Shown: positions 8,740 through 61,300 of the stretch, piece by piece
Layout: the number at the start of each line of letters is the position of its first letter
Position numbering within the stretch: position 1 is the first letter of the stretch
NCBI RefSeq assembly: GCF_003704095.1
Contig: NW_020846655.1
Location: 62,001 to 126,000 of the forward strand
Direction: 5' to 3'
DNA length: 64,000 nucleotides
Source: Pocillopora damicornis
Taxonomy: Eukaryota
The notes under the pieces: model-generated
Told to the model about the DNA's origin: nothing
The model's database searches: none
What the model saw: the letters and a program-made list of their open reading frames with translations, nothing else
Made by a program: the position numbers and the translations under genes

Positions 8740-11700
8740 TTAACATTCCATACTGACTTCACTGAGTCGCACACGCTCTGCTATACTGCTGTGTAGTTCC
8801 ATGAAAGAGGGTCTCTCCTCCATTTCTCTTGTCCAACAGCGGCACATGACCTGGTACAGATCGTCTGGACATGTCTTCGGCTGAGGTAACCGAGTGGAGG
8901 GCGTACCCGTTCCATGGAAAATCTTCTGCGCGTTATCAATGACTTCCTCGTCGGTGAGTTCCGAGTAAGGATATTCTTTAGCAAGAGTGAGTATCTCCCA
9001 TAGAGTGACTCCGAACGCCCACACATCACTAGACGTTGTAAAACGACCTGAAAATATCGACACATATGTGAAATGAATGTAAATGAAATAAGGAAAAAAC
9101 AAGTGAGATGAATCTCTTTCTCCTCCGCATTTATCTAGTTGAAACTTGTGCGCCTCTGGTATGCGTCGTAAGGGTTCCCTGGAGCCCATCCTCGGCATGT
9201 CTCGTTTTCTTTCAGAAAATATCGTCCGATCTCAGTAAACCTCACGCTTCTCTGTAAAATTGGTCGTAACCAACCACCTAAATTACCGTTCCATATTAAC
9301 ACCTCCCATCGAACGAGTGCCTCTCCTATCGACCAAAATTCAAAATATACACCCCACCCCCTCTAAAACAACTACCTCCTTTGCTCCCACAGTATAATGG
9401 CCAAACGCTCAGACAATAACAAACGTATAACAACGGCGAATTTCCTCAATTTCGTCCACCCTTGCAAAGTTATACCGAATATGATCCACTTGGTAACACC
9501 TTGAGTTTAGAGAACTAATTACGAGTCCCAATTGAGCCGCTGTGAAACTTAAGAATCCGCAGTTAGTATCAATACACCGCTTTTGCTGTCGTTGACGCTG
9601 TATCACAAAAAACGATCACATCTGAACCCCCCGTCTTACCCTAAATTCGAGATAAACCCCAGGCACTAATCCGAGGACTCGTGGTATACTATGCCACCAC
9701 CTCTTACCTTGTAGAATACATTCGGGCGCCATCCATCGTATTGGCAAAATCACACGTCCCTCGACGCGATAATAATGTTTAGAGTACAAGTTCCTTGACA
9801 TTCCGAAGTCAGCAATTTTGACGGTGTTTGCGTGTCCCACCAAACAGTTACGCGTGGCCAGATCACGATGCACATAATTTAACGAAGATATGTATTTCAT
9901 TCCTGCGGCCACTTGCTTTGCCATGTAAAACAGAGCTTGAGATGAGATATACTGTCCGGCATCTTGCCACCCCTCGCTTTCATTCAAGCTGGGCGTATGC
10001 TCTTTTTCTTTCAGGAACTGATTTAAGTCGCCATTGGCCATGTACTCAACTATCATACACATGGGATCATCCCGACACACACCTAACAACCGAATCACAT
10101 TTGAGTGCTTCAGCCCCGCCATGGCTTTCACTTCTTTAAAGAAATCATCCTTAATGTTCTTATCAACGTTCAGCTTGAGAGTTTTAATAGCCACTGTTGT
10201 ACGAAAACTGTTTTTGAACTCCCCGCCCAGAATGTCTCCCAATCGCTCAACCTCTCCAATATGCACCTCACCGAATTGTCCATCACCGATCTTTTCTTTG
10301 AAGTGAAGCTTGTGACGAGGCAGTTCCTTGAATGTGTCCAGTCTGGGTCTAAAGTTTAGCTCCTCGTCAGGATTACAATACAAACTGGTGCCCGATACGC
10401 CCTGAAATGGCTCGGAGTAAATCTCCTCGTAAATAGGATTTGGGAAAGTAGTCACTGATGTGGGAGAAATGACATCGATAGGATCAGCATACCCGCTAAC
10501 AACTCTAGGTTTGGGAGAATCCGGTATCAAGCGATTTTTTTCGCATGGGGAGTCCGGCTCGGCATAGTCATTATATGCAACATCTGATTCCTCTGTTACG
10601 TCTACTTGAGGAAGACTTTGGGCTGTTGCGGCTTTGGGAGATCCACCATTTGTAGGTGAAGGTAAAAGAGGAGTGTTAGGTTCGGCGTAAATTACCTCTG
10701 AAAGAGGCTCAGGCGGCTTCAGTGGGGGTGGTATGGGAGGTTTAACTGCAGAGAGACAAGGACAAAAATAGATGATGAACAGTATAGAGTATTCACAGAC
10801 TTTCTTTTTCTCTTAAAACATGGCCTTCCGCGCGAGTGTTGTAAGGAACGCGAACGCAATGGGAAGGAGATTTGAATTACTAACGTACAAACAATTTTTA
10901 TTTGGTTGGCAACACCGTTAACATAGTTCCCCGTAACTTAGCTTTGAGAATTGGTTTATATTTCAAAATACCACCCGCAGTTCAGTTTTTTGCTACTCAT
11001 CAATTCATTATGGGATAATGTCCTGATACCGTGGAGGGAAGAAACTTATTCCTTCCAGCAGATAAAGGGTTAATATTTTCTATACACACCTTTCTTTGAA
11101 GACTTGTGTTCAGAGTAAAGTCTTTCACCCTTTGGTATGTTGTTCTGTTCGTCGCTTTTCATAGTGCCTTTGTTCAGATCACCCTGTATACTAGCATATA
11201 TAGGACATATGGTAACCTCTGCACCACTCTTTCCACCCGCCTCATTGTACACATTGTTCTTGAAGCTGTACCTCTTTTCTTCGTTTTCACTTGCTGTACT
11301 ATCAAGTCGAGAAACGCGCTGCGGCGTCTGGTGACGCGCGTACGGCTTAACTTCGACTTTGATGAAGGAGTTGAATGGCTTTTCACGCTGAGAGAACCAG
11401 TGAGGGTAACGCTTGCAGCAAATGAACAAAGCAACAGCAACTAGGACTGCTACGACGGCACAGATGATTGCCGCAATTACACCACCGCTTAATGAACCCT
11501 TTCTAGTACCAGTCTCTCCTCCTAAATATCAAAGAAAACACTTCCGATTAGTATCTTTTCTCAAGTACATGTTGCATGTCTACTTTAGCAGTATGACCAT
11601 TTGTTTTATGCAGGGAGGGGGGGGGGGGTCCTAGTCGGCAAGAACAGCACAGGGTTCATTTCCGCTGGCTGATTTGAGTCAGGAGGTCAAAATCTGCCAG

Positions 11701-14700
11701 CGGAAATGGCCCGGGAGGTGGTGGTTCAAATCTGCTAGGTCACCAGTCTAGTCGTGTGAGGAAAGCAGAGGGCTCGGCACTTTCCCGCTGCTTCGTGCAA
11801 ACGGAAAATACAGCATTCTGTCAGGCTTTTTTTGGGCACTTCCATACGTAATAACTTCAAACAAGGTACATAATCGGATGTAGGAAAGAAAAGATATTAT
11901 CAAACCTGTATTTCCTTCATCGCTAACTGATGGGCTGCTGCTGGTGATTACACCTCTTTGGCCAGTGGGAGATTTTGTGGACAAGGGAGGAATCGAAGCA
12001 CACACGGGTATTGGGGGTGAGTTTTCATCAAGAGGATCTGACGTAAATAAAAAAGTTACGAGCATGTACACTAAGTCAACAAAGAAACTCAAGCTCAAAC
12101 ACCACAACAAAGATTACCTAAAGCTTCAACAAAAGGGAAAAACCTTAACACAAAAATACAATTGATATAGAGGAGGTGAAGATGGAAGGACTCAGAAAAC
12201 AACAAGGACACTTCTCCCCCACCTCCATGAGCTTCCAATTTCTTCACACGTTTTTCATTTTCCTTTAAATCTACTAAATAATTAAATAATTATATCAGTT
12301 TTAGAGGCATAAAGGACACACTAAAAAAGTTGTGCAAAACATGATACAATTATATAGCCCAGTATATATAATATAGTTATGTAAATCGTCTGAAAAGTAC
12401 AGCTTTCCTGGGTGAAAAAAAATTCAGAATACAAATGCTAATGTTTAAACAGAGTAGATTTCAAGGAAGCAGAGCAATCAATGGAAAATAGCTTTGAGTG
12501 AGTATCATATATCACTTAAGATATTTCACAGAAATACCAACACACTTGGTTCACCGTGGTATCACGCTATGGAACAATATCAAACCCAAAAGGTGCAAAA
12601 TAAAATCCCAATAGTGAAGCGGGACTGCACTTTCACTGGAAGAAGACAGTTCAGTGACAGTCTTTCAACAACACAAATCTTTGAACTTACTTGAATTGAA
12701 AGTAATTTCACTGATCAATATCCAATGTCCAGCATAAGTAAATTTTAACTCCATGAACTTCCCAACATGTTTGCACAAGTCAATTGTAACATTATAATTT
12801 TCCCATCTTATTCCACTTGAAATTTGCTTTGATTTGAAAGACAGTGTCTTGTCAAATGTAGCACCATCTTCACCAAATCTTACTGTAACATTAGAAAACA
12901 ACATGACACTTGCTTCATCCCTGACATTACAGTGAATGGTCACTGAATGGAAGATTCTTGTGTTCAAAAACTCAAACATAATGTAAGGATCTGGAGTATC
13001 CTTAGCATTCCAGCCAATCCAACCCACTCCATCAGTGTTGGCATAATTAACAGGAGCCAGATGACCATCAGTTAGCATTCCAAGGCCAGAGGACAGAGAG
13101 TTGCCTTTGACCAAACCATCATAACTTGAATCAGTGAAATTGTACCTTCCTTCCATTGAATTACCTTGAAGAGTCTTATATGTGACAAGTCCTGAGTAAA
13201 AGGAAGAAATTTCAAGTCAAATCAAGTTAGACAGCCAGTCATGAGAATAAAAAGAGGTATCATGGATGTACAGTTCAGTGGATGAACAACTAAGACCAAT
13301 GAATTTGTGTCCAAGGACTGGTTTGGTATACTTCACGTGCAAACGCAAGGAAACTGAGATACACAAGCTCAGCAGAGGTATTTTTCCAAGATGGCCAATT
13401 ATGATGAAACTTTTTCGTCACAGAGTTTACTGCAATATGTTATATCATTCATTATTGTTGGGAGAGTTCTGAGGAGAAATTACAGTTTACTCAATGGTTT
13501 GAGAAACATTTTATTATTGCATCAATGTACCAGTATATGCTGTATATTTATATTCTTTCATTAAACATACTGTTCTTTTTGGCCCACTTCTCTGCCCAAA
13601 TCTTTCCAAGCAAGACTCTCCTTTGATTTGTCTTAAAATTTGTGTCCAAAAGTACAGAAAATTTCCTCAGCTCTCAACCAGTTTTTTTTTCTGAAATAGA
13701 CGTCTATGCCATTTTGTTTTTCACATTACGTTTGCATTTGCATTGGCATTGCCCCAGTTCACACATGTAGGAAGCAAATACAAATGCAAGAAAATGAAAT
13801 TTGTTTCATTCCTCACATTGATGCTTGTGCTTGCACTTGCGTTATTGTAGTTCATACTTATGTTTCCTTGCATTGGCATCATATCAGTTTTAACTTCTTA
13901 ATTCTAATTAGACAATAATGTGTCAATCAGCATTTGAACTTTCGAAGATTGCCCTGTTCAAATTCCTTTATATTGTGGGTTTTACCATTTTCCTTTATGA
14001 TGTGCTCTTCTGACAAAACTAGAAGGCCAGAGTTGACAAGATACAGTTGAGCATTTTCACAAATTTATTTTGATTGCAAACCTCAGATTTACAACAACAA
14101 AAGATTATTTGTTGCATAATAACTATGAGTAGCCAAAAGCTAAAGCAGGTTTTCAAAAGACAAAATCAAATAGCCGATAAATTGGTGCTGAAACCATAAA
14201 TTACCATTTTTAAGAGGACAGCCAAGGATTTCAAGCCTCAGACACACTTGTGTTTTTGGATCTATTGTTGGAGCAATTCTGATTGCATCTGCAACAATTG
14301 GTGGCCTCAGTATGTTTTCCTGATCATTATTGTTCTTGTTACCTTCAAAGGCCTGTTAGCAAAGAAATAAAGAACAAGAGTTAATGAAGGCCACCAACCA
14401 CATAATAATCAAAGTTAATTGAGATTTGTGAGAGTTCACTTAAAATGGTAGCTAAGGCCAACAAAATTCTGTTCCTTCAGCAGCTATTTGTAATGATGGA
14501 AGCTGCATAACTCAAGCATTGGATTAAATTCATCGCTCTCAAAACTACTTGTTCAAACAAAGTTTCACACAATCTTTCAATTATTGTGAAAATACAAACA
14601 CACTACTGACCAGTAGCAATAAACATGCTGATTCTGAATAAAAAACTGATGATATAATGAAAATTGGCAACCATTGCCAACCAGGATTTTTTGACAACCA

Positions 14701-17145
14701 TTATTTCTGTAAATACTTTCAAATAAAATTTTTTTTTTGGGAAAGATGTGGTAAATATTCTAAAGAGCAAATGAGCAGACAGCAAGAATACTTTCTTTTC
14801 TCAGTGAATAAAATTCAATCACAGCATATCAGTATTGGTGACCACAGCCACCATGGAGCTTTTCAGGGTCAATGAGGCATAAAACAAAAGGTTTCAAGTA
14901 AAAGAAAAAAACTGGGAGGATGTCATATTAATTGGCCTTGTAAAGGGCACAAAAAAGAAAAAATAGGGTGAGTGAGGAGGTGGATGGCTTAGGTTTGCAG
15001 CCATCACATCACAAATCTACCAGCCTGTTCCCTAACCAGTCCACCATGTTACCTCCTCAAATTGTCTGGCTCACATTTACTGTATACAAAATTTTATCAA
15101 GTGTGTCTGATAATTTATTAGTACATACCTTTGGTCGAGGGTTTTCACCATCATAATACCAATCATAGGTCAGTTTCTTTTCTTTAGAATAACTAATCCA
15201 GTACTGTTCTACTTTTTCTACTCCTTCATGACGGCCCTGTGTCACAATGCCTTTGATTCGCAAAGAAGTGTCAAACTGAACTTGTATGAACTCTTTGTGA
15301 ATTGTAGCTGTATCATTTTCATATGGCCTCTGATCAGGGCACCACCCACCATATCCATCAATATGATTCAACCTAGCATAAGTAGCCATACTTAGTGGTC
15401 GAGAAGAAGTGGCACGAATGTTTTCATCCTTGATAAGACCATTTTCCATTCCCAAAGGCAACAAACAATCTATAAAGAATGATAAAAGAAGTGACTAGGA
15501 TCATCATATTTTCCCCTTACATGACAGGTCTGCTCTCATTACATGGTAAAGCACAGTTCCTATACAAAGAGCTAGCAGTTGTCACTATCATATTTAAAAA
15601 CTATTCCATGAGTGCGTGTTGAATATTAGATGGTAACTACAGTAGCCATTGAGGTGCTTATTGCCAAGTTGGCCAAAACCACTCAGATCAAACAATTGAG
15701 AGTGAATTGGATATAGAAGCAATCCTTGCAGTTATGAACACTACTGAACTAGTAATTGAAATAAGGCCTAAAAAAAATTCAGGCCTATACGGGATTTGAA
15801 CCTATGACCTCTGTGATACCAGTGCAGCACTCTAGCAACAGAGCTAACAAGCCAACTGGGAACTGGTCATTATTTTGAATTCAAATAAACCTTCCAAGTG
15901 GTGAATAATGAATGTAAATATATGAAAATCATATATGTGTACTGAGGTTGAAGAAACAGATATAGAAGCAATCCTCGCAGTTATGAACACTACTGAACTA
16001 GTAGTTAAAACAAATATTTCAACTTTCCAATATTGCTTTAAGAGCTCACTAAACTTGATTTCACTCTGAAAAATTGTTATAAATTAAAATGACAGGTAGC
16101 CCATTTTACTTCTCCCACAAAAATGGCAAAATAATCACATGACATGTTACACTGAAGTGTAGTGTTGTGTGAAGAGTGTTAATGATACATGTATTTAGTC
16201 AAGAGTGGGATGTCATATTTTAATCTGGCTAATAAGGGTTATGTGAAAGTGAAAGAACCATATTATATGGAGAACAAGAGAAATATGTAAATCACATGTA
16301 TCTAACTACCCCATCTCTTAAGTTCTTCAGATTTACTGGTAGTTTGCAACATGAAACTGCATCGATTGTTGGGAGTGTTATCATTATTGATTTTTAACCT
16401 TTAAGCCCTCTTCTTTCCAGTTGAGTATTCTTCTGCAAATTGCCTCCTTGTTTGTGAGGCGCTAGGAGGATTTATTTTTATCAAGGATGGAGAAAAAAAG
16501 AAGGAAAAATGAGCTAGATCATTTCAGCCTACAGCCCAACTACAGACAGAATTTTGAATTATGTTGATAATTCTTCTATGTACTCAAGAAGAAATTTTGG
16601 CCTATGTTCCACCCCCTGATATTTGAACAGAAGACAATAGCAGGACTATGGGGACAAAAGCAAATCTTGCAGTAGGGGAGGCAGGGGATAATGTGTTTGA
16701 TCCAAGTTTTAATGCATAAATTAATTTTCCAATAGATAAAATTCAAATAAGTGAGTAAGTGAGTAAGTGAGTGAATTTTCCTTCCATACCTAAACCTGTA
16801 AATGTAGCTATCACATACATGTCAGTTAAACAAAGTCAAGCTTATTTGTTCTTCATATGTTCCTTTCTAGAGAAACACATTTACCTTAGTTCCTGTTTTA
16901 AATTAGTGAATCAGACCACATTTGTATCAAACTTTGCAAAGATGAACAAAACTGTGGGTCTAATTGTTGATCTTCAGGTCTTAGTATCAAGAAAGCTGTA
17001 TAAAGAGAATACATACAAATAAAACTGGGAATACAATGCAGTTAGTTGTCTGAGATGATCCAAAACAGAACTTACCTTCCTGACACCCTCCAGAAATAAA
17101 AAAGGCACTTGCCAAAAGTAACATTTTCCACAAAGAAACAATCAT
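8740..17145 (-). CDS. DDR2: Discoidin domain receptor tyrosine kinase (DDR1/DDR2-like), ~989 aa
   Basis: Coding exons in transcript order: 17145-17076 (signal peptide MIVSLWKMLLLASAFFISGGCQE); 15469-15129 and 14352-14205 (F5/8C discoidin: CLLPLGME..GGWCP..TQGRH..CLRLEILGC); 13191-12691 (DS-like domain); 12037-11906; 11521-11090 (TM GGVIAAIICAVVAVLVAVALFICC); 10745-9708 (GDGQFGEV, VAIKTLK, HRDLATRNCLV, DFGMSRNLYSKHYYRV); 9047-8740 (SDVWAFGVTLWE, TAA). All phases are consistent. The donor at 11090 is the least certain. The symbol denotes the family; orthology to DDR1 vs DDR2 cannot be resolved. Confidence 0.93.
15711..16003 (-). mobile_element. tRNA-derived SINE-like repeat with ~43-bp direct repeats at both ends
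   Basis: The minus strand of 15781-15853 reads ggcttgttagctctgttgctagagtgctgcactggtatcacagaggtcataggttcaaatcccgtataggcct (degenerate A box, B box ggttcaaatcc). atatagaagcaatcct(t/c)gcagttatgaacactactgaactagta occurs at 15711 and 15960. Confidence 0.7.
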
Positions 17146-31474: not shown

Positions 31475-32806
31475 ATGGCTAGAGTCAGTGAGGATCTCGT
31501 CAGGTCGGATCTCGTCAGGTCGGATCTTTACGACTACGCTCCTGCCTCAAACTTACTATTGAACGAGAAGGTGAAAGAGCTTATGGCATCTGGAAAGCCA
31601 GTATATCATCTAGCGTTCGGTCAGTCACCATTTCCAGTAATGGAGTCAGCTCGCTTGGTTCTCGCACAGAACGCCGAGAAGAATGCTTACCTTCCCGTGG
31701 CTGGAATCTCGCAGCTGAGGAACGCCATCTGTGAATTTCATCGAGAATTTGACGGTTTTGAAGTTTTGCCAGACAACGTTATTGTTGGACCAGGCTCTAA
31801 GGAACTGATCTTCCTCCTCCTCGCGGTTTTCAGTGGTGATGTCTTTGTTTTGTCTCCTACGTGGACAACATTCAAGCCCCAAGCTCGCCTTGCGCACCAC
31901 GATGCCATAGTTATTACAACTGAGTATCGGCACGACTGGCGGGTCACTCCGGACATATTAGATCGAGCTCTTAGCCGATCATCCGCGAAAAACAAAATCA
32001 TCGTTTTGGTCAACCCCGATAATCCTACGGGAACTGCTTACACTCAGGAACACTGGAAAGAATTACTGCCGGTCCTTATAAAACACAATGCCATCGTACT
32101 GTCCGATGAGATTTATGGACGTTTGAACTTTGCAGACTCTCACTGTTCATTGGTAAAGTTTTATCCAGAAGGAACCATTCTGAGTTCAGGTTTGTCTAAG
32201 TGGGCCAGTGTAGGTGGTTGGAGGGTAGGCTATCAGATCTACCCAGCTCAATTGAGACCCTTGTTAGATGCTGTCAAAAGTGCTGCAAGCCATTCTTACT
32301 CATGTGCGGCTGCACCCATGCAGTATGCTGCTGTAACTTGCTTTACTCCATCCAAAGAGTCAAAAGCTTACATAGCCCATGAATGCCGCATCCTGGCAGC
32401 CATAGCTGATTATAGTTATCAGCACCTTACAGAAGTAGGGGTGAGAGCTGTGAAACCTCAGGGTGGCTTCTACATGTTCCCTGATTTTGAAGTCATCAGA
32501 TGTGCACTTTCCAATCGGGGTATCACCACTGCACAGCAAATGTGTGATGCAATCTTTGAAGAGGTGTCAGTCGCACTCATGCCTGGAGGTCCAGCATTCC
32601 TTAGACCTTCAACAGAACTCACTGTTCGCTTGTGTTTTGTTAATTTTGACGGCAGTGTTGCATTGAAGGCCAGTATGGCCATTGGACTTCACAAACCACT
32701 TCCTGAAGGATTTGTGGAGGAACACTGTGTGCTGACAGTAGGTGGAATCCAGGCTCTCAAACAATGGACTCTTAATCAAAAGGCTAGTGTGTCTCATGAC
32801 TTGTAA
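31475..32806 (+). CDS. Intronless PLP-dependent class I/II (aspartate aminotransferase-like) aminotransferase, 443 aa
   Basis: Uninterrupted ORF with fold-type I motifs: HLAFGQSPFPV, YLPVAGISQLRNAI, IVGPGSKELI, LVNPDNPTG, LSDEIY, SGLSKWASVGGWRVGY (PLP lysine), PQGGFYMFPD, VRLCF. A 15-nt tandem duplication at 31492-31527 gives DLVRS-DLVRS-DL. Confidence 0.92.
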   Translation: MARVSEDLVRSDLVRSDLYDYAPASNLLLNEKVKELMASGKPVYHLAFGQSPFPVMESARLVLAQNAEKNAYLPVAGISQLRNAICEFHREFDGFEVLPDNVIVGPGSKELIFLLLAVFSGDVFVLSPTWTTFKPQARLAHHDAIVITTEYRHDWRVTPDILDRALSRSSAKNKIIVLVNPDNPTGTAYTQEHWKELLPVLIKHNAIVLSDEIYGRLNFADSHCSLVKFYPEGTILSSGLSKWASVGGWRVGYQIYPAQLRPLLDAVKSAASHSYSCAAAPMQYAAVTCFTPSKESKAYIAHECRILAAIADYSYQHLTEVGVRAVKPQGGFYMFPDFEVIRCALSNRGITTAQQMCDAIFEEVSVALMPGGPAFLRPSTELTVRLCFVNFDGSVALKASMAIGLHKPLPEGFVEEHCVLTVGGIQALKQWTLNQKASVSHDL

Positions 32807-53835: not shown

Positions 53836-56800
53836 ATGTCATCGTCATCACAGACAGCCTTTCGAAGCCGGAGCAAGACTCTGCCATTGCCTTCCAGAGT
53901 TAAGATCGAGAAAAAGATTGTACAAGAGCCCAAAACAAGGTCGCCACTTTCCTTCAGAAGGTTAGTTAGGTTATCAATACTATTGTGGTGTGAACTGAAA
54001 ATATGTCCTATGCAATGGTGTCGTATCTCGTAAATTTACGTGTTCTGCATAAAATAGTTTTATCATTGAATTGTTTAATTAAGATGCGCACCGTTTAGTG
54101 GTAATGTTATCTACTAATTTTACAGACACAATTGAAATACTAAGAGGTCTTGTGTATATTACGTTAGCGGCAAATCAGTTACTGAATTTCGTAATAGATA
54201 CTAAACAAACGAAGAAACACGATAGTTTGCAGATAAGCACTGTGTGTTATTAGATAAACGTCTGGGTCTTATTTGGAAACAGCGTTTGTTTCGAAATATT
54301 TATTTTATTCCCTTTCGACGACTTTCCTCGTTCCTTCCTTGGTAAAATAAACAGATTACCTTGGAAAAAAATTGTCGCCTACATCCATGTGGTTTTGACG
54401 TAGAGGTCATAACTATTTAAATTGCCGTGACTTTTTAAACTAGTTTGAAACAAATCTTGTTTATTTTGGGGACTTAATAGCTGCACTATCAATTATTTCT
54501 CAATATAAAGTTATTTTTATTTCTTTACGTGTCACACATCTGTCAGCCTTGCGTGACAACTTAACTGCACTGCACTTTTTTAACAGTGATGTACAGGATT
54601 ATATTGACTATGCTCTTTTGTTTACAGATTAGCGGATCTTTTGAAAAGGAAGAAAAAGCGAAGTAAAGGAGCTTCTGATTCATTCAATGTGCCCTTAGAA
54701 AGGCAAACCTGGTTTCATGGAAAGATCACAGCAGATTTTGCAGAGCGTTACTTACGGCGAGACGGAAACTTCTTGGTGCGTGAAGACCCCGCAAAACCAG
54801 GCAGCTGTTTTATCGTGGTGCGCCACAAACGGTCAGCGGTTCACATACCAATTGTCAAAGTAAACTCATCCAAAGGAACAAGAATAAAGTATAGGACAGA
54901 GGAATCTGAGAACAGTTTCGATTCCATATGCGAGTTAATTCACTACTATGTAACAGAAAAGAAACCATTAACCCCGAACACTTCAGCAGTAATCACTCAT
55001 GCTGTCAGCCGCGATGCAACACTTTTGTCATCAGACGATTTAAAAAGTATGAACTCCAATCATCATAACAGGTATGTAACAAACACTGTTCCTGCTAATG
55101 CCTGTCCGCTCAATCCCCCTGGGACTGGTCCCCTGCGTCAAAGACGAATCGACAAACCTACTCGCAAGAACAGTGATCCCGGATTACATCTTGAGGTTAA
55201 CACAAATGGCGTCAAAATGCGACATTTTACAATGGATTCTCAGGTGAAAATAAATGTTCCCTCCTCCCCAGAAAAATTATCATGGACAATTCAGCCGAAA
55301 CAACGGGAGAAAATTCCCGAAGCATTCCTTGCAAAGGCCGAGAAAGAGGAAAATTTGCCATTTTATGAGACACCGTTAGGAGAAAAGAAAGTCGAGGATC
55401 TGAAGGAAACTTTACAAACGTCGGAGCCATTTTATGAAGATCCTAATGAAAAGGAAAGTTTGGAAAATTACTATGACAAACCTGGAGAAAAGGAAAAGTC
55501 ACCAACGTCAGTTGGTGACATGGAGAAAATAAAACCTTCTGATGAAAAAGAGGAGCTGGAAAAGAATGATGGCTACTACGACAGACCTGCGAATGGGATT
55601 AACGACCAAGATTTTTATGATAAACCGTCTCCCATAGAAAGCTCGGAAGAACACTACGACAAACCACCGAGACAATCCAGCCAAGCAAGCCTGTCGAACA
55701 CTTCCAGAGAACAAAGTCAGGAAGATGTTTATGATAAGCCACGACGTAGCATTGATTGCCTGTACGACACACCACGGGCCAGTCAGGATAACCTATACGA
55801 CAAACCACCCCCCAAACCAAAAAGGACTGAGTCTTTCAGGAACTCAGATCCAACTGTTTCTTCGAAAATTCCTCCCAAACTCGTGTCACGATGCAGTGCA
55901 CCTGCATTGCGGACCTATGATTCTGACGCATCTGCCCGCCGGGGTCCTTCCTTTGAAGCTCTTCCGGAGAAAAGGCATTCAGGGGCTGAGGTTTTCTTGA
56001 GGAAAGCCACTTCCAAGAATTCATCTCCAGGTGGAGTTAGCTTAGAGTCTGAAGCTTACTACTCTACGCCTCCATCAAGGCAAACAGAAAGTCCTCTATC
56101 ATCAAAATCTGACCTCGGCTCGCCTGAGAATCTAGACATATATGACGTACCAACTGAATCTGGCGCTATTTCGGAACAGGAGCTGACACCATCAAAGCCA
56201 ACTGATGGCGAGAAAGAGAACCAAACGAGTCCAAACGTGGCAGATAACAGACCTAAGCGTTCAGGTTCTGTGGACAAACAGGGAATCTTTTTAAATGTGA
56301 TGAAAAAGATTGGCGAGAACTTGCTTTCTCCGTTCCTAGAGATTGATTGCCTCGCCCTTGCGAGACACTTGACTCGGGTGGATCTGATACAACTATGGGG
56401 CGAGGAGCCGCAACGTCAGTCTTGGAGCATTGAGGATGGCACTGGAGGAGCCAAAGGCCTGGAAATTCTTACGCTTCCTCAAGGAAGGGACCAAAGGGCA
56501 CAATTACTTTCAAGGTTCGCATCTGTTAGATATAAGAATTAGAACTTAAAATCAGTTTTGCCTAAGTTTTAGGTTACTCCACCATCCTAGTCTATCAAAA
56601 GAATGTCTTCCTTCCTAAGGACGGAAACGTTATGTGTATTGATTAAGGGAAAGACTTCGTCGCACATTGATAAGGGAGCATCTTTTACGTCCCAACGAGC
56701 ACGCTACTACTCTGACCTACCTTTGTTCCTCTCATCATGTAGTTATCACTGTTCTTATCATCATGTAGTCATCATTGTTCTTATCATCTCGTAGTCATCA

Positions 56801-58374
56801 AATGAACATCCCACAAGTGTACCATACTGGTATCTCTACATATTTCTCTGTGGGGTTATTAAGCATCGCATTAGGAATAAAAACTAAGGGGGGGATAGAA
56901 GAACCACAACAGCTTTGACAGTTAACATGACAACTTACTCTTCTCTTCTCGCCATATGGCTTATCCTTCGTTTTTTTTTCACCTTCGTGCATGTTTTGAA
57001 GAATTTAACTTCCCATCAAGATATAAAAAAATCAAATATATTTGAGAAAAGTAAGAGACCTTCGTCACTCTGGTTGCCATAATTTCGTTCACTTTTCAGG
57101 GAGGAAAAAATACTTAAGCCCGACAGAGTGTTTTCTTTTTAACCGTAAACCATCGGTTATTACTCTCGCCTTTCCTCTTTTTTTTAGATTTTCTAATGTG
57201 AGACACTGGGTAGCGACATTAGTCGTGGCTGCGGGTGACCTGGGCACCAGAGGCAAAGTTCTCAAAAAGCTGATTGAGTTGGCTGACGTTCTGAGCGACA
57301 AACTTGGTAACCTGGTGTCATTTATGGCTGTTATGGAAGGACTCTCCTTACCTCAGGTACTTTTTCGTCCTGATTCACCCGTTTAGTGTACAGAAGGGAG
57401 CGTGAGCAACGGCAACAACATACGAAACGTCAACGTTGACTGAAAAAAATTGACATATATTTTAGAGCAGTCTGCAACGTATTTGGTGTGTAATAAAGTT
57501 TGCTCAAAGACTGTGCAAAATTATGAAAAAAAAGGAGACTGAGAAGAAAGGAGGTTTGATAGTTTTGAAGATTTAGTGTCGTCTTATATTGCCAGTAATT
57601 TTTCATTCATGGTTAAATTCCTGTCGAATCATCTCAAATGAAAGAATCGATGGCTTAAATTACGCCCTTGGTAAAAAATATGTTGAGTTTCTTTCTTTCC
57701 TTTCTTGCCAGCTTGAGTGATGAAATTTTGTGGCCAGTTTGTGCCGCAGTCTTTAAATATTAGGTTGATGGATGCGTGCGTGCGTGCGCGCGCGAGCTTG
57801 AGTGAGTGCGTGTGTGAGTGTGCTCTTGTGTCTCTGTTTCCTTGAATCTGTAAATCCCTAAATCGTGGTTTATCTTTAGGTAACGCGACTTCACCACGCG
57901 TGGTCATGCCTTCATCGCCAGTGCAGTTCTACCGCGATTCTCTACCACAGCACTCTCAAGCCTTTGGCGGGGCTCTTGAGCTCAGGGGCTCCTAGCCCTT
58001 TTCCCGGAGTGAGCCTTCCTTATATCATACCCTTGGTCAGGTACCTGGAAATGACCCCGGAAGAAATTCTCAGTGACTGGACACATGCTGAGGTAGACCT
58101 TGGGTTAGAAACAATATCGGCACATTTGGACTCTGGGCGCATTCTGACGCAGCAGCTTGAAGAGTTCCGCGTAGAAGCAATTAATCATCTACGCAAAGAT
58201 GACTTTGTAGTCGATGCTAAACTCATTGATTATTTCCAAGAGAAAGTCAACATTGGAAATGTGTTAGGACTGGGTCCTGATTCCACCAACCGGACAAATA
58301 AATTAAGGACTTTGCTGCAATGGCTCTCGGAAAACGCGGAACATCTCACTAGTGCAGAGACTTCTGGAGTGTAG
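53836..58374 (+). CDS. BCAR3: NSP-family adaptor (BCAR3/SH2D3C/SH2D3A-like): SH2, Ser/Pro/Tyr-rich linker, C-terminal Cdc25/RasGEF-like domain, ~891 aa
   Basis: Exons 53836-53960, 54628-56514, 57188-57356 and 57880-58374 (TAG), phase-consistent. SH2 WFHGKI..AERYLRRDGNFLVRE..FDSICELIHYYV; GEF-like LARHLTRVD..GLEILTLPQG, HWVATLVV..RGKVLKKLIELA..LGNLVSFMAVMEGLSLPQVTRLHHAWSCL. The start could lie in a further upstream exon (acceptor at 53787). The symbol denotes the family. Confidence 0.85.
57772..57822. repeat. Alternating purine-pyrimidine microsatellite (GCGT)n/(GC)n/(GT)n
   Basis: atgcgtgcgtgcgtgcgcgcgcgagcttgagtgagtgcgtgtgtgagtgtg, about 60 bp upstream of the last NSP exon acceptor. Confidence 0.7.
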
Positions 58375-61300
58375 AGAAGGGAACTTTGTACATTTATCTT
58401 ACAAGTTAGTGTTCCTGTGATCTGCTGCTGTTAGTTCATGGTTGTTGGGATGCCATTTCATATGTTTCTGTTAGGTCGTTACGAGAACACGGTTGTCGAT
58501 CTTTCAATCATGAAATTATTCTAAATTGTAATTCTGTATACTCTGGACTCTGTTTTGATTTTTTATTTACAAAGTTGGAGTTTTTTTTTTTTTTTTATGG
58601 CCAGAAAAGGGTTTTCGTTGACATGGTAATTTTCACATGTACAGTCCTTTATCTTACACTATGTGTAGTCATTTTCCACAGATCACAGGTTTCTTTTCGA
58701 AAAGTTTTTTTTTCTACTAAAGAAAAATGAGAAGATAAGCGAATATCTTTCTAATTGTAAATAAATCACCTGAATTGGACCTTGTACTGAGTTTTAATTC
58801 CGACAGTCAGAGAACTTTTCTATATATACATGAATAAAATAATTCTGTAATCTAGAAAGAAAATAAGCAATAAGAGAGAAGAAGGTGTCTCACTCTGCAG
58901 TTATTCCATAATTGCACAGTTATGCTTAAAAGAATGACTGCGTATCGGTCTTGGAAAATGTTAAAGTGAAGCCTAGAGTTGAACTCAGTGCAAATTTTGG
59001 AAACATCAAGGGTTTATTTTAAATTTTTTTTTGTAAATTTTTTAAAAATTCATTCTAGATGAAAGAATTTTATTTCAGTGTTGAAGTTCTAGCTTGTCTG
59101 GACCTCGACTTGAAAATTTTATGAATTCTGTTGATGCCGAGAACATAAGATGTTGTACACAATTGAGTTTTGAACCAGGTACTTGTAAATATCAACAGTT
59201 TTTGGTAAGAAGCTGAGAAGTAAATTAAAGAGCTTTGTGAGTTACCACTGACTGAATTTGATTGAAGCGATGCTCTATATAGCGTTTCATATCTTTCAAC
59301 TCTGCCCTTTCATTTGACTCCACTTTTAAAATTCAGTGCTATTTTAAGCCTGTACCTTAAAACCCTCCTGTGTGGTAGTGAAAGCCATTGAAACCTATTA
59401 GTTGCGTCTCCATGTCGATCTGTTTGTTATGCTGTTGCAAGCAGTTGTTCCAATTTGTACTTTAAACGAAATCGTAGTGTGTGACCTTTTATCTCAAAGC
59501 TATTAAGCAGTGCAGTTCCATGTGGTGCCGTTTATTGGGCTCTTCATGAGATGGATGAGGGTCATCTAAGACTGAACACAAACTTAGCGTGCGATCAATA
59601 ATATAACAGTGAAAACGTGATAGGAAATCCTTTTCATGTGGAGTCAATATTTGTTTTCTTGAACAAGCGGTAGCTCTAACTTTGAAGTTTTGTACAAAAA
59701 AAAAACCCCAAGTGTTCGTTTGTGTGACCATTCAAATGAATGCTATTGAGTAAGCAGTGCCTTCATGAAAATTCACCGCCCAGTTAAAAGGCTTTGTGCT
59801 GAACGCAACCCTTACCAAGGATCTGATTTGAACATCAAATCTGCCCAACAGTACTTTCCTTTACTTTGATCCTTTTAAATTGATTTTATCACCTTGGAAT
59901 TAAAACATTCGGTCATTTCAGTATTTCGCCATGCAAGAGGATAAAGGGGAAATTTTTAATTTAGTTTTATTGAAATTGGTGTGTGAAGCTTTTCTTTAAC
60001 AATTGCACCTGCTGAAAGTCTCGGCTAGCCTTTGTTCTTTATACCTAGAGTACGTTTTTAGGTGAATAATTTGAGAGAAATGAAACTGTCTTTAAAATAG
60101 CAGGATTACTCGGTAGCTAACGGTGAATTCCCAGGTTAAAACACTAAATTAATTGCTGCAACGTAGTCAAAATTCAATTTGGGACAGCACACAGTATATC
60201 ACGTGAATTCAATTGTTTTTTTTTTCTTCCCAGCTTAGAATTTATGATAACAGAGCTTTACGGTCTAGGTAGGTTAGAGAAAGGTTAGAATCAGGATTTG
60301 TTCTATCCATTCAACACGCCGAACCTTGAGGAAAGGGTACTCTTCGAGGTTATTTCTGATCGAAACGCTGACTTCCCTGGGAGCCTTGCACTTTTATTCA
60401 GAATTCCTCTTCGGTAAACTAGCGACCTATCGCTCTTCAAGGTCTTTTATGTTATTGTAGGAGGTATTGTCCCTGATTACAAAATGGGTGGCAAGCAGAA
60501 AAGTAAACTTGTCTAATTCTGATCAGTGATGAATAAATCACTTTTAATTGTTTTCACTGGTGTTTTTCGAAAATATGGAGTTACTGTTCTAGCTGGATGG
60601 GATAAAATCATTTCAGTAATTATAAAGTTGAAGGATAATTTTCTCCTTTGAAAATCAGTTGTAACTTAAGCCGCAAAAAATGAGAAGACTTTTAAGAGAC
60701 TGTCGACACGGGTACATCTTTCTAGTTTTGACAGGTCTCAGAGATCGATCTTTGGATGAAGGTTTGAAACTTCATACCCGCAATTAAGCATGTCATTAGA
60801 CACCAACTAGTTGAATTGTCACTCTGTCTCTCAAAAAAAGAAGTAGCCAAGCTGTTGCACGTGCTTCACGGCCGCATCTTTCAAACTGACAAACTCGTCC
60901 AAGTTTACATTGAGTGCAGAAATCAACTCAAGTTTCATGGCAGACTATTCCCAATTAATATTTTAACACCTCTCAGTCTTTCAATGCTTTCAACATTTGT
61001 CATTTTACTTGATTTAATCCTCGTTATCGATCCAAAACTGCCTAGAAATCGATTAACCTCATCTTTCAGAGTTTCTCATCTCCTCTACACGTGTTGTTGT
61101 TGAGATCAGTCCAGAGGAGTTACATGAAACCCTACCCACAATTCTATGGCAGAATACTCCGAAAAAAAAAAATCAAGCACTTGTCACCTTTTGGCATTTC
61201 GCGCTCTTTATGTGAGACAACCTTAAAAAGTTCGCAGGGAAAAGGTCACGGTACACGATATGAACAAATAGTGAAACGGATGGGCAAAGTGCGTCACAGA

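What the first reader, a model, noticed from the sequence alone, without database searches (positions are those of the whole stretch)
55364..56152. NSP-family adaptor carries its own Cas-like substrate domain: 11 YxxP motifs
Seen: between SH2 and the GEF-like domain lie YETP, YEDP, YDKP, YDRP, YDKP, YDKP, YDKP, YDTP, YDKP, YSTP and YDVP, mostly preceded by acidic residues and in part spaced 11-14 aa apart, all within one 1887-bp exon. Established: vertebrate NSP proteins (BCAR3, SH2D3C) recruit p130Cas/NEDD9 via the Cdc25-like domain, and it is Cas that provides the YxxP array phosphorylated by Src/Abl to bind Crk/Nck and act as a stretch sensor. I do not recall such an array in vertebrate NSP linkers. 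Inference: this protein may merge NSP and Cas functions in one chain, giving a direct receptor-to-Crk (possibly mechanosensitive) scaffold in an early-branching animal.
Basis: partly seen in the sequence, partly recalled or inferred. Interest (0 to 1): 0.75.

Follow-up and report, generated by a model that had tools for sequence, protein, structure and literature searches.

The report
Coral NSP adaptor with YDKP array
A stony-coral signalling adaptor of the BCAR3/SH2D3C (NSP) family carries, between its two usual domains, a conserved row of eleven tyrosine motifs of the kind normally found on its partner protein Cas, so corals seem to have added a second docking platform to a cell-adhesion pathway.

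Summary
The 1887-nt exon 54628-56514 (+) of a stony-coral NSP/BCAR3-family gene encodes an SH2 domain, a roughly 420-aa disordered-type linker and the start of the Cdc25-like domain. The linker has 11 YxxP motifs at the stated coordinates (8 YDxP). Shuffling gives 1.7 on average and never more than 8 in 100,000 trials. Spliced RNA contigs from 4 studies cover the exon.

The motifs are conserved position by position in stony-coral relatives: motif Y 0.91 and P 0.95 identity, against 0.48 for the rest of the linker. The array is not typical of the family. Two named sea anemones have 3 motifs, 101 other NSP representatives (sponges to vertebrates) have 0-4, and 120 vertebrate SH2D3C proteins have 0-3.

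The "merger with Cas" reading is only partly right. The same genome keeps a normal Cas gene (SH3, 7 YxxP, Serine_rich, CAS_C) and a Crk gene. The coral NSP also keeps the Leu/Arg pair that BCAR3 needs to bind Cas.

Most likely this is a lineage-specific Src/Abl-phosphorylated array that docks Crk-type SH2 domains, added to NSP and working alongside Cas. No phosphorylation or binding has been shown. I found no paper describing it.

Verdict: a new variant of a known kind, of moderate interest.

The parts
53836..53960 (+). First coding exon (ATG at 53836, about 41 codons, donor after 53960). An upstream alternative start is possible.
   Evidence: The loose ends of RNA contigs left of 54626 match 53929-53958, followed by AG|GTTAGT. 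ATG position. The translation matches the N-terminus of relatives P0002 and P0039.
54628..56514 (+). 1887-nt exon encoding SH2, linker and the start of the Cdc25-like domain.
   Evidence: Contigs of 4 RNA runs from 4 studies span 54626-56514. Acceptor ag lies at 54626-54627 and donor GT after 56514.
54710..54949 (+). SH2 domain, with the FLVRE phosphotyrosine-binding arginine motif starting at 54770.
   Evidence: Pfam PF00017, E 1.8e-11, residues 24-103. FLVRE position. F-L-V-R-E-D is invariant in 10 anthozoan proteins.
55364..56152 (+). Array of 11 YxxP motifs. The consensus in stony corals is [D/E]-x-[F/L/Y/V]-Y-D-K-P.
   Evidence: count and shuffles; conservation; consensus; disordered-type composition; no DNA tandem repeat.
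55808..55825 (+). PPKPKR, a class-II-like PxxPx[KR] motif directly after the ninth YDKP.
   Evidence: Regex hit, coordinates. Similar YDKPP(A/V/P)(K/R)PKR is seen in relatives. SH3 binding is not tested.
56276..56514 (+). Start of the Cdc25-homology (RasGEF-like) domain.
   Evidence: Aligns to the conserved KKGIFLNVMKK... block of relatives. Orthologue P0002 matches PDB SH2D3C 3t6g from this point.
57188..57356 (+). Exon 3, middle of the RasGEF-like domain.
   Evidence: Joint 56512>57186 (GT..AG) in 4 of 4 RNA runs. Pfam RasGEF E 1.7e-8 on the enclosing open frame. Frame.
57880..58374 (+). Last coding exon (stop at 58372-58374), the C-terminal part of the GEF-like domain. HLDSGR at 58123-58140 corresponds to BCAR3 L744/R748.
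   Evidence: Joint 57354>57878 in 4 of 4 RNA runs. Translation. HLDSGR coordinates. Alignment of orthologue P0002 to BCAR3 chain 3t6a.

Best explanation
This is the single NSP (BCAR3/SH2D3C-type) adaptor gene of a stony coral. Its SH2 domain and its Cas-binding Cdc25-like domain are conventional. The disordered linker between them has evolved a conserved array of about 9-11 [acidic]-x-[hydrophobic/aromatic]-Y-D-(K/T/R/V)-P sites in stony corals.

Inferred mechanism: tyrosine kinases of the Src/Abl type phosphorylate these sites. Each pY-D-x-P then docks the SH2 domain of a Crk-type adaptor, or another pYxxP reader such as Nck. The NSP itself thereby becomes a multivalent docking platform, working like the substrate domain of Cas.

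The coral keeps its own Cas and the NSP keeps the Cas-binding residues. The array therefore most likely adds a second arm to the NSP-Cas complex (11 + 7 sites) and does not replace Cas.

Shown: the array, its expression, its conservation, its rarity in other NSPs, and the presence of Cas and Crk genes.
For: - Array and statistics: 11 motifs against 1.7 expected, and 0 of 100,000 shuffles reach 11.
- Expression and splicing: 4 of 4 RNA runs from 4 studies.
- Selection on the motifs: each of the 11 is kept in 23/32 to 30/31 of the non-redundant cnidarian relatives that cover it. In 17 stony-coral-like rows, motif Y is 0.91 and motif P 0.95 identical, against 0.48 for other linker columns, 0.46 for non-motif Y and 0.55 for non-motif P.
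- Variation in RNA contigs: of the 24 listed differences in this exon, 13 change linker residues. Only one falls in a motif, at an x position (R>T). None touches a motif Y or P.
- The linker lies on the disordered side of the charge-hydropathy boundary. The SH2 and GEF parts lie on the folded side.
- Reader and partner exist in the same genome. A Crk gene lies on contig C750: its second SH2 half best matches the CRK-II SH2 (4.9e-12) and its SH3 best matches CrkL (1.3e-16). A Cas gene lies on C2604.
- Crk SH2 recognition of pYxxP, including pYDVP peptides, predates animals, and cnidarians have crk and bcar1 orthologues (PMC5043372, passages).
- The BCAR3 L744E/R748E mutant does not bind Cas (PMC8266394, passages). 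These two residues align to the L and R of coral HLDSGR and are invariant in 10 anthozoans.
- A basic residue at +2 is said to disfavour Src-family SH2 binding (PMC8266394 discussion). This would steer pYDKP towards non-Src readers.
Against: - There are no phosphorylation or binding data for any cnidarian NSP.
- My recollection that the Crk SH2 optimum is pY-D-H-P was not checked in any call.
- Similarity between the NSP linker and the coral Cas substrate exon is confined to the motifs (BLASTP E 0.015), so common descent is not shown.
- Cas binding rests on two aligned residues. HLxxxR is found in only 66 of 87 other NSP representatives.
Confidence: 0.6

Rival explanations
1. The array is a phosphotyrosine docking platform, but its main reader is not Crk. 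It could be another pYxxP/pYDxP-type SH2 (Nck, Abl, RasGAP, a cnidarian-specific SH2 scaffold) or the NSP's own SH2 domain. In the last case the result would be autoinhibition or head-to-tail chains.
For: - The conserved Lys at +2 distinguishes these sites from the coral Cas YD[VI]P sites.
- The genome has at least 36 SH2 matches.
- The NSP SH2 keeps its FLVRE arginine.
Against: - No specificity data exist for any coral SH2.
- YDxP is the classic Crk-type motif in Cas (PMC5043372 and PMC8266394).
- A Crk gene is present.
Confidence: 0.22
2. One reading: the coral NSP has taken over the Cas role (NSP and Cas merged in one chain), so that Cas is dispensable or lost.
For: The NSP array (11) is larger than the array in the coral's Cas substrate exon (7).
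Against: - A complete single-copy Cas gene with SH3, YxxP array, Serine_rich (1.2e-27) and CAS_C (5.5e-39) is present.
- The NSP has no SH3, Serine_rich or CAS_C domain.
- The NSP retains the Cas-binding L/R pair.
Confidence: 0.04
3. The motifs act without phosphorylation, for example as a proline-containing ligand for some other domain or as a spacer. Alternatively they are a neutral by-product of an old, decayed repeat.
For: - No phosphorylation evidence exists.
- The linker is Pro/Ser/Glu/Lys-rich.
- The spacing of 11-13 residues hints at an ancient repeat unit.
Against: - Motif Tyr and Pro are conserved at 0.91 and 0.95, against 0.46 and 0.55 for other linker Tyr and Pro.
- There is no repeat at the DNA level.
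- Codons differ between motifs.
- The acidic/hydrophobic flanks fit tyrosine-kinase sites (my knowledge, not a call).
Confidence: 0.12
4. Artefact: a mis-called open frame, an intron read as coding sequence, or contamination.
For: None found.
Against: - Spliced RNA contigs in 4 of 4 runs, with exon depth about 10-fold above intron depth.
- Full-length relatives carry the same linker between SH2 and GEF.
- The gene is single-copy in its own genome.
Confidence: 0.01

Closest known systems
Vertebrate NSP proteins (BCAR3/NSP2, SH2D3C/NSP3/SHEP1, SH2D3A/NSP1)
   Same: - Same architecture: SH2, unstructured linker, Cdc25-like domain.
- The orthologue matches PDB 3t6g (SH2D3C, 2.2e-28) and 3t6a (BCAR3, 7.8e-28).
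- The L/R Cas-binding pair and the SH2 arginine are conserved.
   Different: - Vertebrate linkers have 0-3 YxxP. Of 120 SH2D3C proteins, 10 have none, 91 have one, 18 have two and 1 has three. BCAR3-type proteins of a teleost, a lamprey and a hagfish have 0, and SH2D3A of a shrew and a trout have 0.
- The human BCAR3 phosphosites shown in PMC8266394 are YVKF (Y117) and YGTS (Y266), which are not YxxP.
- No full-length mammalian BCAR3 was examined here.
Substrate domain of Cas proteins (p130Cas/BCAR1, NEDD9)
   Same: - A disordered array of many YxxP (mostly YDxP) sites with acidic flanks.
- Its size lies within the 6-25 range reported for Cas orthologues (PMC5043372).
- It is tethered on both sides by binding domains.
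   Different: - A different protein family: no SH3, Serine_rich or CAS_C domain.
- No sequence similarity beyond the motifs.
- The +2 residue is mostly Lys here, against Val/Ile in the coral's own Cas.
Choanoflagellate transmembrane proteins with cytosolic YxxP repeats, some with SH2-like domains (PMC5043372)
   Same: They combine a YxxP repeat array with an SH2-type domain in one chain, outside the Cas family (passages).
   Different: - They are transmembrane proteins without a Cdc25-like domain.
- Their taxa are unrelated.
- Relatedness to the coral linker was not tested.
NSP proteins of other invertebrates
   Same: Many carry one or two YD[IV/T]P sites 40-100 residues before the GEF-like domain, for example Lingula, Owenia and several unnamed proteins. 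This is where the coral and sea-anemone YDVP sits (44-49 residues before the GEF-like domain).
   Different: They have one to four sites and never an array. Of 101 proteins, 50 have none.

Membership tests
NSP (BCAR3/SH2D3C/SH2D3A) adaptors | SH2 domain ahead of the linker | tested here: met
   Pfam PF00017, E 1.8e-11, residues 24-103 of the exon product. FLVRE arginine motif present.
NSP (BCAR3/SH2D3C/SH2D3A) adaptors | C-terminal Cdc25-homology (RasGEF-like) domain related to those of BCAR3/SH2D3C | tested here: met
   Pfam RasGEF E 1.7e-8 on exon 3. The orthologue P0002 hits PDB 3t6g_A and 3t6a_A as its best two matches. Exons were searched one by one.
NSP (BCAR3/SH2D3C/SH2D3A) adaptors | Cas-binding surface (BCAR3 L744/R748 equivalents) | tested here: met
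   The L and R of coral HLDSGR align to chain residues 244/248 of 3t6a, which fit L744/R748 at an offset of 500 (my count on the alignment). They are invariant in 10 anthozoans and present in window exon 4. Only two residues were checked.
NSP (BCAR3/SH2D3C/SH2D3A) adaptors | Closed, catalytically inactive GEF fold and physical binding to Cas | not testable with these tools
Binding needs an experiment.
Cas (p130Cas/BCAR1) scaffolds | Array of multiple YxxP sites (substrate domain) | tested here: met
   11 YxxP, 8 of them YDxP.
Cas (p130Cas/BCAR1) scaffolds | N-terminal SH3 domain | tested here: not met
   No SH3 hit in any exon product. The coral's SH3-bearing Cas is a separate gene on contig C2604.
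Cas (p130Cas/BCAR1) scaffolds | Serine-rich bundle and C-terminal FAT-like CAS_C domain | tested here: not met
   Absent from the window gene. PF08824 and PF12026 each match once in the genome, both at C2604.

The most novel reading that the evidence does not exclude
In stony corals the NSP-Cas module has been rebuilt into a two-armed platform of about 18 sites. The NSP arm is held taut between a receptor-bound SH2 domain and a Cas-bound GEF-like domain. It acts as a second stretch- or kinase-gated substrate with its own private code (pY-D-K-P, Lys at +2), read by a different SH2 protein or written by a different kinase than the Cas arm (pY-D-V-P). If so, this would be a natural example of one adhesion scaffold's function being split and re-coded across two partner proteins.
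Probability: 0.15. Interest if true: 0.7.

Novelty: new variant of a known kind. Interest (0 to 1): 0.5.

Why it matters
[quoted passage not shown] In the vertebrate model, all the multivalent Crk docking sits on Cas. A lineage in which the NSP partner carries an equally large, strongly conserved YDxP array shows that this division of labour is not fixed.

It also gives a natural test case for three questions:
- how multivalent phosphotyrosine platforms arise in disordered linkers;
- whether the residue at +2 (Lys against Val) encodes reader or kinase choice;
- how adhesion signalling is wired in reef-building corals.

It is directly testable with peptides, recombinant SH2 domains and kinases.

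Tried and rejected
**Chance.** Rejected by the shuffles.

**Gene-model artefact.** Rejected by the spliced RNA contigs.

**Recent tandem duplication.** Tandem Repeats Finder found nothing at minimum score 30 in 55200-56300, and the codons differ between motifs.

**Array borrowed from Cas.** BLASTP of the linker against the coral Cas substrate exon gave only motif-level matches (E 0.015 for a single comparison), so homology is not shown.

**A second, array-less NSP paralogue in the genome.** Only the self match was found.

**Word search from the Nematostella C-terminal domain.** It reached cnidarians only (20 proteins). The profile search of the 50%-identity library was therefore used.

**Taxa of the unnamed relatives.** Their taxa stay unknown.

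**Language-model look-alikes of the linker.** No usable hit.

**Papers.**
- Searches found no paper on a cnidarian NSP or on a YxxP array in an NSP linker. For these I saw listings only.
- Exceptions, of which I read passages: PMC8266394, PMC5043372 and PMC10532290.
- The find in PMC2192828 returned nothing.
- One search was badly designed: with a minimum of 2 terms it matched coral names only, and it is not used.
- The NSP reviews and structure papers PMC3513790, PMC4036165, PMC2948029 and PMC3230775 are not held. The interface residues therefore rest on the L744E/R748E statement in PMC8266394.
- Supplements were not opened. Supplementary tables of PMC5043372 (proteins with multiple YxxP hits) may bear on whether NSPs were ever flagged.

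**Rows left out.**
- One search counted only proteins in which both domain profiles matched (177 of the 218 then stored).
- The tree used 77 rows whose GEF match covered at least 200 profile positions. It is the quick tree, because the careful search did not finish.
- collapsed 78 sequences to 35 at 95% identity.
- One search used the first 17 of the 23 rows of A2, leaving out the 6 most distant.
- Of the 101 'other' NSP representatives, 24 are named. Seventy were placed outside the anthozoan clade in the tree. The other 31 are unplaced fragments and could include other cnidarians.
Full report
**What is in the sequence.**
- The open frame 54641-56542 (+) translates to 633 residues.
- It has an SH2 domain at residues 24-103 (Pfam E 1.8e-11).
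- It ends in the first helices of a Cdc25-like domain.
- Two further open frames downstream hold the rest of that domain: Pfam RasGEF E 1.7e-8 on 57042-57383, and a C-terminal piece with the stop at 58372-58374.
- They account for 11 of the 16 tyrosines between the SH2 domain and the GEF-like start. Eight are YDxP and ten are Y[DE]xP.
- Shuffling the 440-residue stretch 100,000 times gave a mean of 1.7 motifs (sd 1.2) and a maximum of 8, never 11.
- Position -1 is hydrophobic or aromatic in 10 of 11 motifs. Ten of 11 have an acidic residue within -4 to -1 (read from the table).
- Five of the ten gaps between motifs are 11-13 residues.

**The gene model.**
- Logan contigs of four RNA libraries from four studies were laid on 54400-58500.
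- All four carry a contig over 54626-56514.
- All four carry the same two joints, 56512>57186 and 57354>57878, both GT..AG. Exon depth is about ten times intron depth.
- An upstream coding exon ends at 53960 and has its ATG at 53836.
- The length of about 891 residues is a count only.
- The contigs come from RNA libraries, which can contain DNA. It is the intron-skipping joints that show spliced RNA.

**Whose gene it is.**
- The word search with the exon product found 74 proteins.
- The named ones are from Stylophora pistillata, Porites (four species), Desmophyllum pertusum and Nematostella vectensis. Sources call them 'SH2 domain-containing protein 3C' or 'breast cancer anti-estrogen resistance protein 3 homolog'.
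- The best match is an unnamed 98%-identical protein. An 87%-identical full-length protein (P0002) is nearly the same as the Stylophora model.
- The window therefore comes from a stony coral close to Stylophora.
- The genome has 234 Mb in 4393 contigs. I recall a similar size for a published Pocillopora assembly, but I did not test that.
- P0002 matches only two non-SH2 PDB entries, and they are its two best hits: SH2D3C (3t6g, 2.2e-28) and BCAR3 (3t6a, 7.8e-28).
- The gene is single-copy here. Its last exon finds only itself in the genome.

**Conservation of the array.**
- After collapsing near-duplicates (78 sequences to 35 at 95% identity), each of the eleven motifs is kept as Y..P at the aligned columns in 23/32, 30/34, 25/34, 26/30, 24/29, 28/31, 30/31, 24/27, 27/31, 27/34 and 26/32 of the relatives that cover it.
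- In the 17 rows of alignment A2 that are at least 52% identical to the window protein, motif Tyr columns are 0.91 and motif Pro columns 0.95 identical to the window. Other linker columns are 0.48, the five other linker Tyr 0.46, and the 34 other linker Pro 0.55.
- The consensus over 257 motifs in 25 stony-coral-like proteins is [F/L/Y/V]-Y-D-K-P: D at +1 in 180 and K at +2 in 114.
- The named corals include Stylophora and Desmophyllum on one side and Porites on the other. From memory these belong to the two deep branches of stony corals, so the array would be old. That dating is recalled, not computed.
- Among the 24 listed base differences in this exon in the RNA contigs, 13 change linker residues. 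Only one lies in a motif, at an x position (R>T). None touches a motif Tyr or Pro. Eighteen further differences were not shown by the tool.
- There is no tandem repeat at the DNA level, and the motif codons differ.
- The linker is rich in Ser, Pro, Glu, Lys and Asp and falls on the disordered side of the charge-hydropathy boundary. The SH2 and GEF parts fall on the folded side.

**Is such an array typical of NSP proteins? No.**
- A profile of ten anthozoan proteins was searched against 1.84 billion representatives. It gave 1350 hits at E<=0.001, 96 at E<=1e-30, and 150 listed.
- Domain boundaries were set with SH2 and GEF profiles cut from the alignment, and YxxP motifs were counted between them.
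- Stony-coral-type proteins have 8-11.
- Nematostella and Actinia have 3.
- Six unnamed proteins, cnidarian-like by score, have 3-10: P0070 has 6, P0071 has 7, P0073 has 6, P0074 has 10, P0076 has 3 and P0077 has 5.
- The 101 remaining representatives have none (50), one (30), two (15), three (4) or four (2). That is 0.30 per 100 linker residues, against 2.6 here.
- Named examples:
  - 0 motifs: the sponges Oscarella and Sycon, Tubulanus, a spider, a millipede, lamprey, hagfish and teleost BCAR3-type proteins, Erpetoichthys, Callorhinchus SH2D3C, and shrew and trout SH2D3A.
  - 1 motif: Apostichopus, Asterias, Nucella, Saccostrea, a tick, Diabrotica, Embiotoca and Aulostomus.
  - 2 motifs: Lingula and Seriola.
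  - 3 motifs: Owenia.
  - 4 motifs: Dallia.
- A further word search gave 120 vertebrate SH2D3C proteins from sharks to primates. Ten have none, 91 have one (mostly YSDP), 18 have two and 1 has three.
- No full-length mammalian BCAR3 was examined. The two human BCAR3 phosphosites whose sequences are printed in PMC8266394 read YVKF and YGTS.
- Only 24 of the 101 representatives are named. Seventy sit outside the anthozoan clade in a quick tree. The other 31 are unplaced fragments.

**A likely ancestral seed.** Many invertebrate NSPs carry one or two YD[I/V/T]P sites 40-100 residues before the GEF-like domain: Lingula YDIP, Owenia YDVP and YDTP, and several unnamed proteins. The YDVP of corals and sea anemones sits in the same place, 44-49 residues before the domain. 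The coral array therefore looks like an expansion of a site type that NSPs already had, and not like an invention from nothing. Vertebrates and arthropods mostly lack it.

**Partners in the same genome.**
- The Pfam families CAS_C (5.5e-39) and Serine_rich (1.2e-27) each match once, side by side on contig C2604.
- The exon before them encodes an SH3 domain, recognised by eye from its sequence because Pfam returned no family for this exon product. It also encodes seven YxxP: YDIP, YAVP and five YDVP.
- So the coral has an ordinary Cas. Its array is smaller than that of its NSP and has Val/Ile at +2, not Lys.
- Among the 36 SH2 matches in the genome, one on contig C750 is followed by frames whose best PDB matches are the CRK-II SH2 (4.9e-12) and CrkL/CRK SH3 (1.3e-16 and 5.5e-13). 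The first half of that SH2 alone was ambiguous, with SHP2 scoring above CRK. This is a Crk orthologue.
- PMC5043372 (passages read) reports three things. Crk SH2 recognition of pYxxP predates animals. Cnidarians have crk and bcar1 orthologues, with 10 YxxP in Nematostella bcar1. Substrate domains range from 6 to 25 YxxP.
- The BCAR3 double mutant L744E/R748E does not bind Cas (PMC8266394).
- On the alignment, the only L-x-x-x-R in that helix of chain 3t6a is at chain positions 244/248. That fits an offset of 500, and it aligns with the L and R of coral HLDSGR.
- Both residues are invariant in ten anthozoans and present in the window's last exon (58123-58140).

**Reading.** The protein is a member of the NSP family and not of the Cas family. 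Its linker works, by inference, like a Cas substrate domain.
- Acidic and hydrophobic flanks with Pro at +3 fit Src/Abl-type kinase sites (my knowledge).
- pY-D-x-P is the Crk-type SH2 ligand.
- Cas is retained and the Cas-binding pair is conserved. The simplest model is therefore an NSP-Cas complex with two arrays (11 + 7 sites).
- The NSP arm is brought to activated receptors by its SH2 domain, and both arms recruit Crk-type adaptors.
- The conserved Lys at +2 is the main unexplained feature. PMC8266394 notes that a basic residue at +2 is predicted to disfavour Src-family SH2 domains. The Lys may steer the sites to a distinct reader or kinase.
- A PPKPKR motif directly after the ninth site (55808-55825) could add an SH3 contact. 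This is untested.
- Mechanosensing is possible in principle, because the array is tethered at both ends, but nothing here bears on it.

**Novelty and score.** I found no paper describing a cnidarian NSP or a YxxP array in an NSP linker. The library lacks most subscription papers, and the key NSP reviews were not held. The finding is a lineage-specific, strongly conserved variant of a known adaptor that borrows the logic of its partner. It is interesting to people who work on Cas/NSP/Crk signalling and on the evolution of phosphotyrosine networks, and it is easy to test. It is not a new kind of system. Interest 0.5.

Noticed in passing
window 8740-15464, minus strand: A discoidin-domain-receptor-type receptor tyrosine kinase gene lies about 40 kb upstream of the NSP gene. 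Its exon products hit PK_Tyr_Ser-Thr (9.2e-59 and 2.4e-23), DDR1-2_DS-like (3.6e-31) and F5_F8_type_C (6.3e-8).
   Followed up: partly
window 31475-32806, plus strand: A 443-aa uninterrupted open frame hits Aminotran_1_2 (1.1e-51).
   Followed up: no
window 55808-55825: PPKPKR (PxxPx[KR]) follows the ninth YDKP directly, and relatives keep it as YDKPP(A/V/P)(K/R)PKR. It may form a paired pTyr plus SH3 docking site.
   Followed up: no
G000 contig C750, about 447100-453000, minus strand (L035): Crk orthologue of this coral. It has the SH2 in two exons, SH3N, a proline-rich linker and an SH3C-like frame. The best PDB matches are CRK-II SH2 and CrkL SH3.
   Followed up: partly
G000 contig C2604, about 74550-77850, plus strand (L004 4554-7847): Single Cas/BCAR1 orthologue. 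It has SH3 plus 7 YxxP (6 of them YD[IV]P) in one exon, then Serine_rich and CAS_C. It has an RSPPAPPQRK motif but no YDYV-type motif in the two exons read.
   Followed up: partly
proteins P0004 (Stylophora pistillata, NCBI) and P0039 (Desmophyllum pertusum, NCBI): The public gene models look faulty in the linker. P0004 lacks about 74 residues, with two motifs, that the near-identical 926-aa P0002 has. P0039 reads out-of-frame-like text where motifs 2-3 and part of the GEF domain should be.
   Followed up: no
proteins P0070, P0071, P0073, P0074, P0077 (unnamed): More distant relatives, cnidarian-like by score, have arrays of their own. P0070 and P0071 have five and six very regular ED[LF]YDKP units. 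P0074 has 10 YxxP, mostly Y[KM]TP. This suggests repeated or divergent expansions. Their taxa could not be found.
   Followed up: partly
non-cnidarian NSP representatives (for example P0085 Lingula, P0098 Owenia, P0197, P0210, P0214): One or two YD[I/V/T]P sites recur 40-100 residues before the GEF-like domain in many invertebrate NSPs. They are mostly absent in the vertebrate and arthropod proteins examined, which suggests an ancestral Crk-type site in the family.
   Followed up: partly
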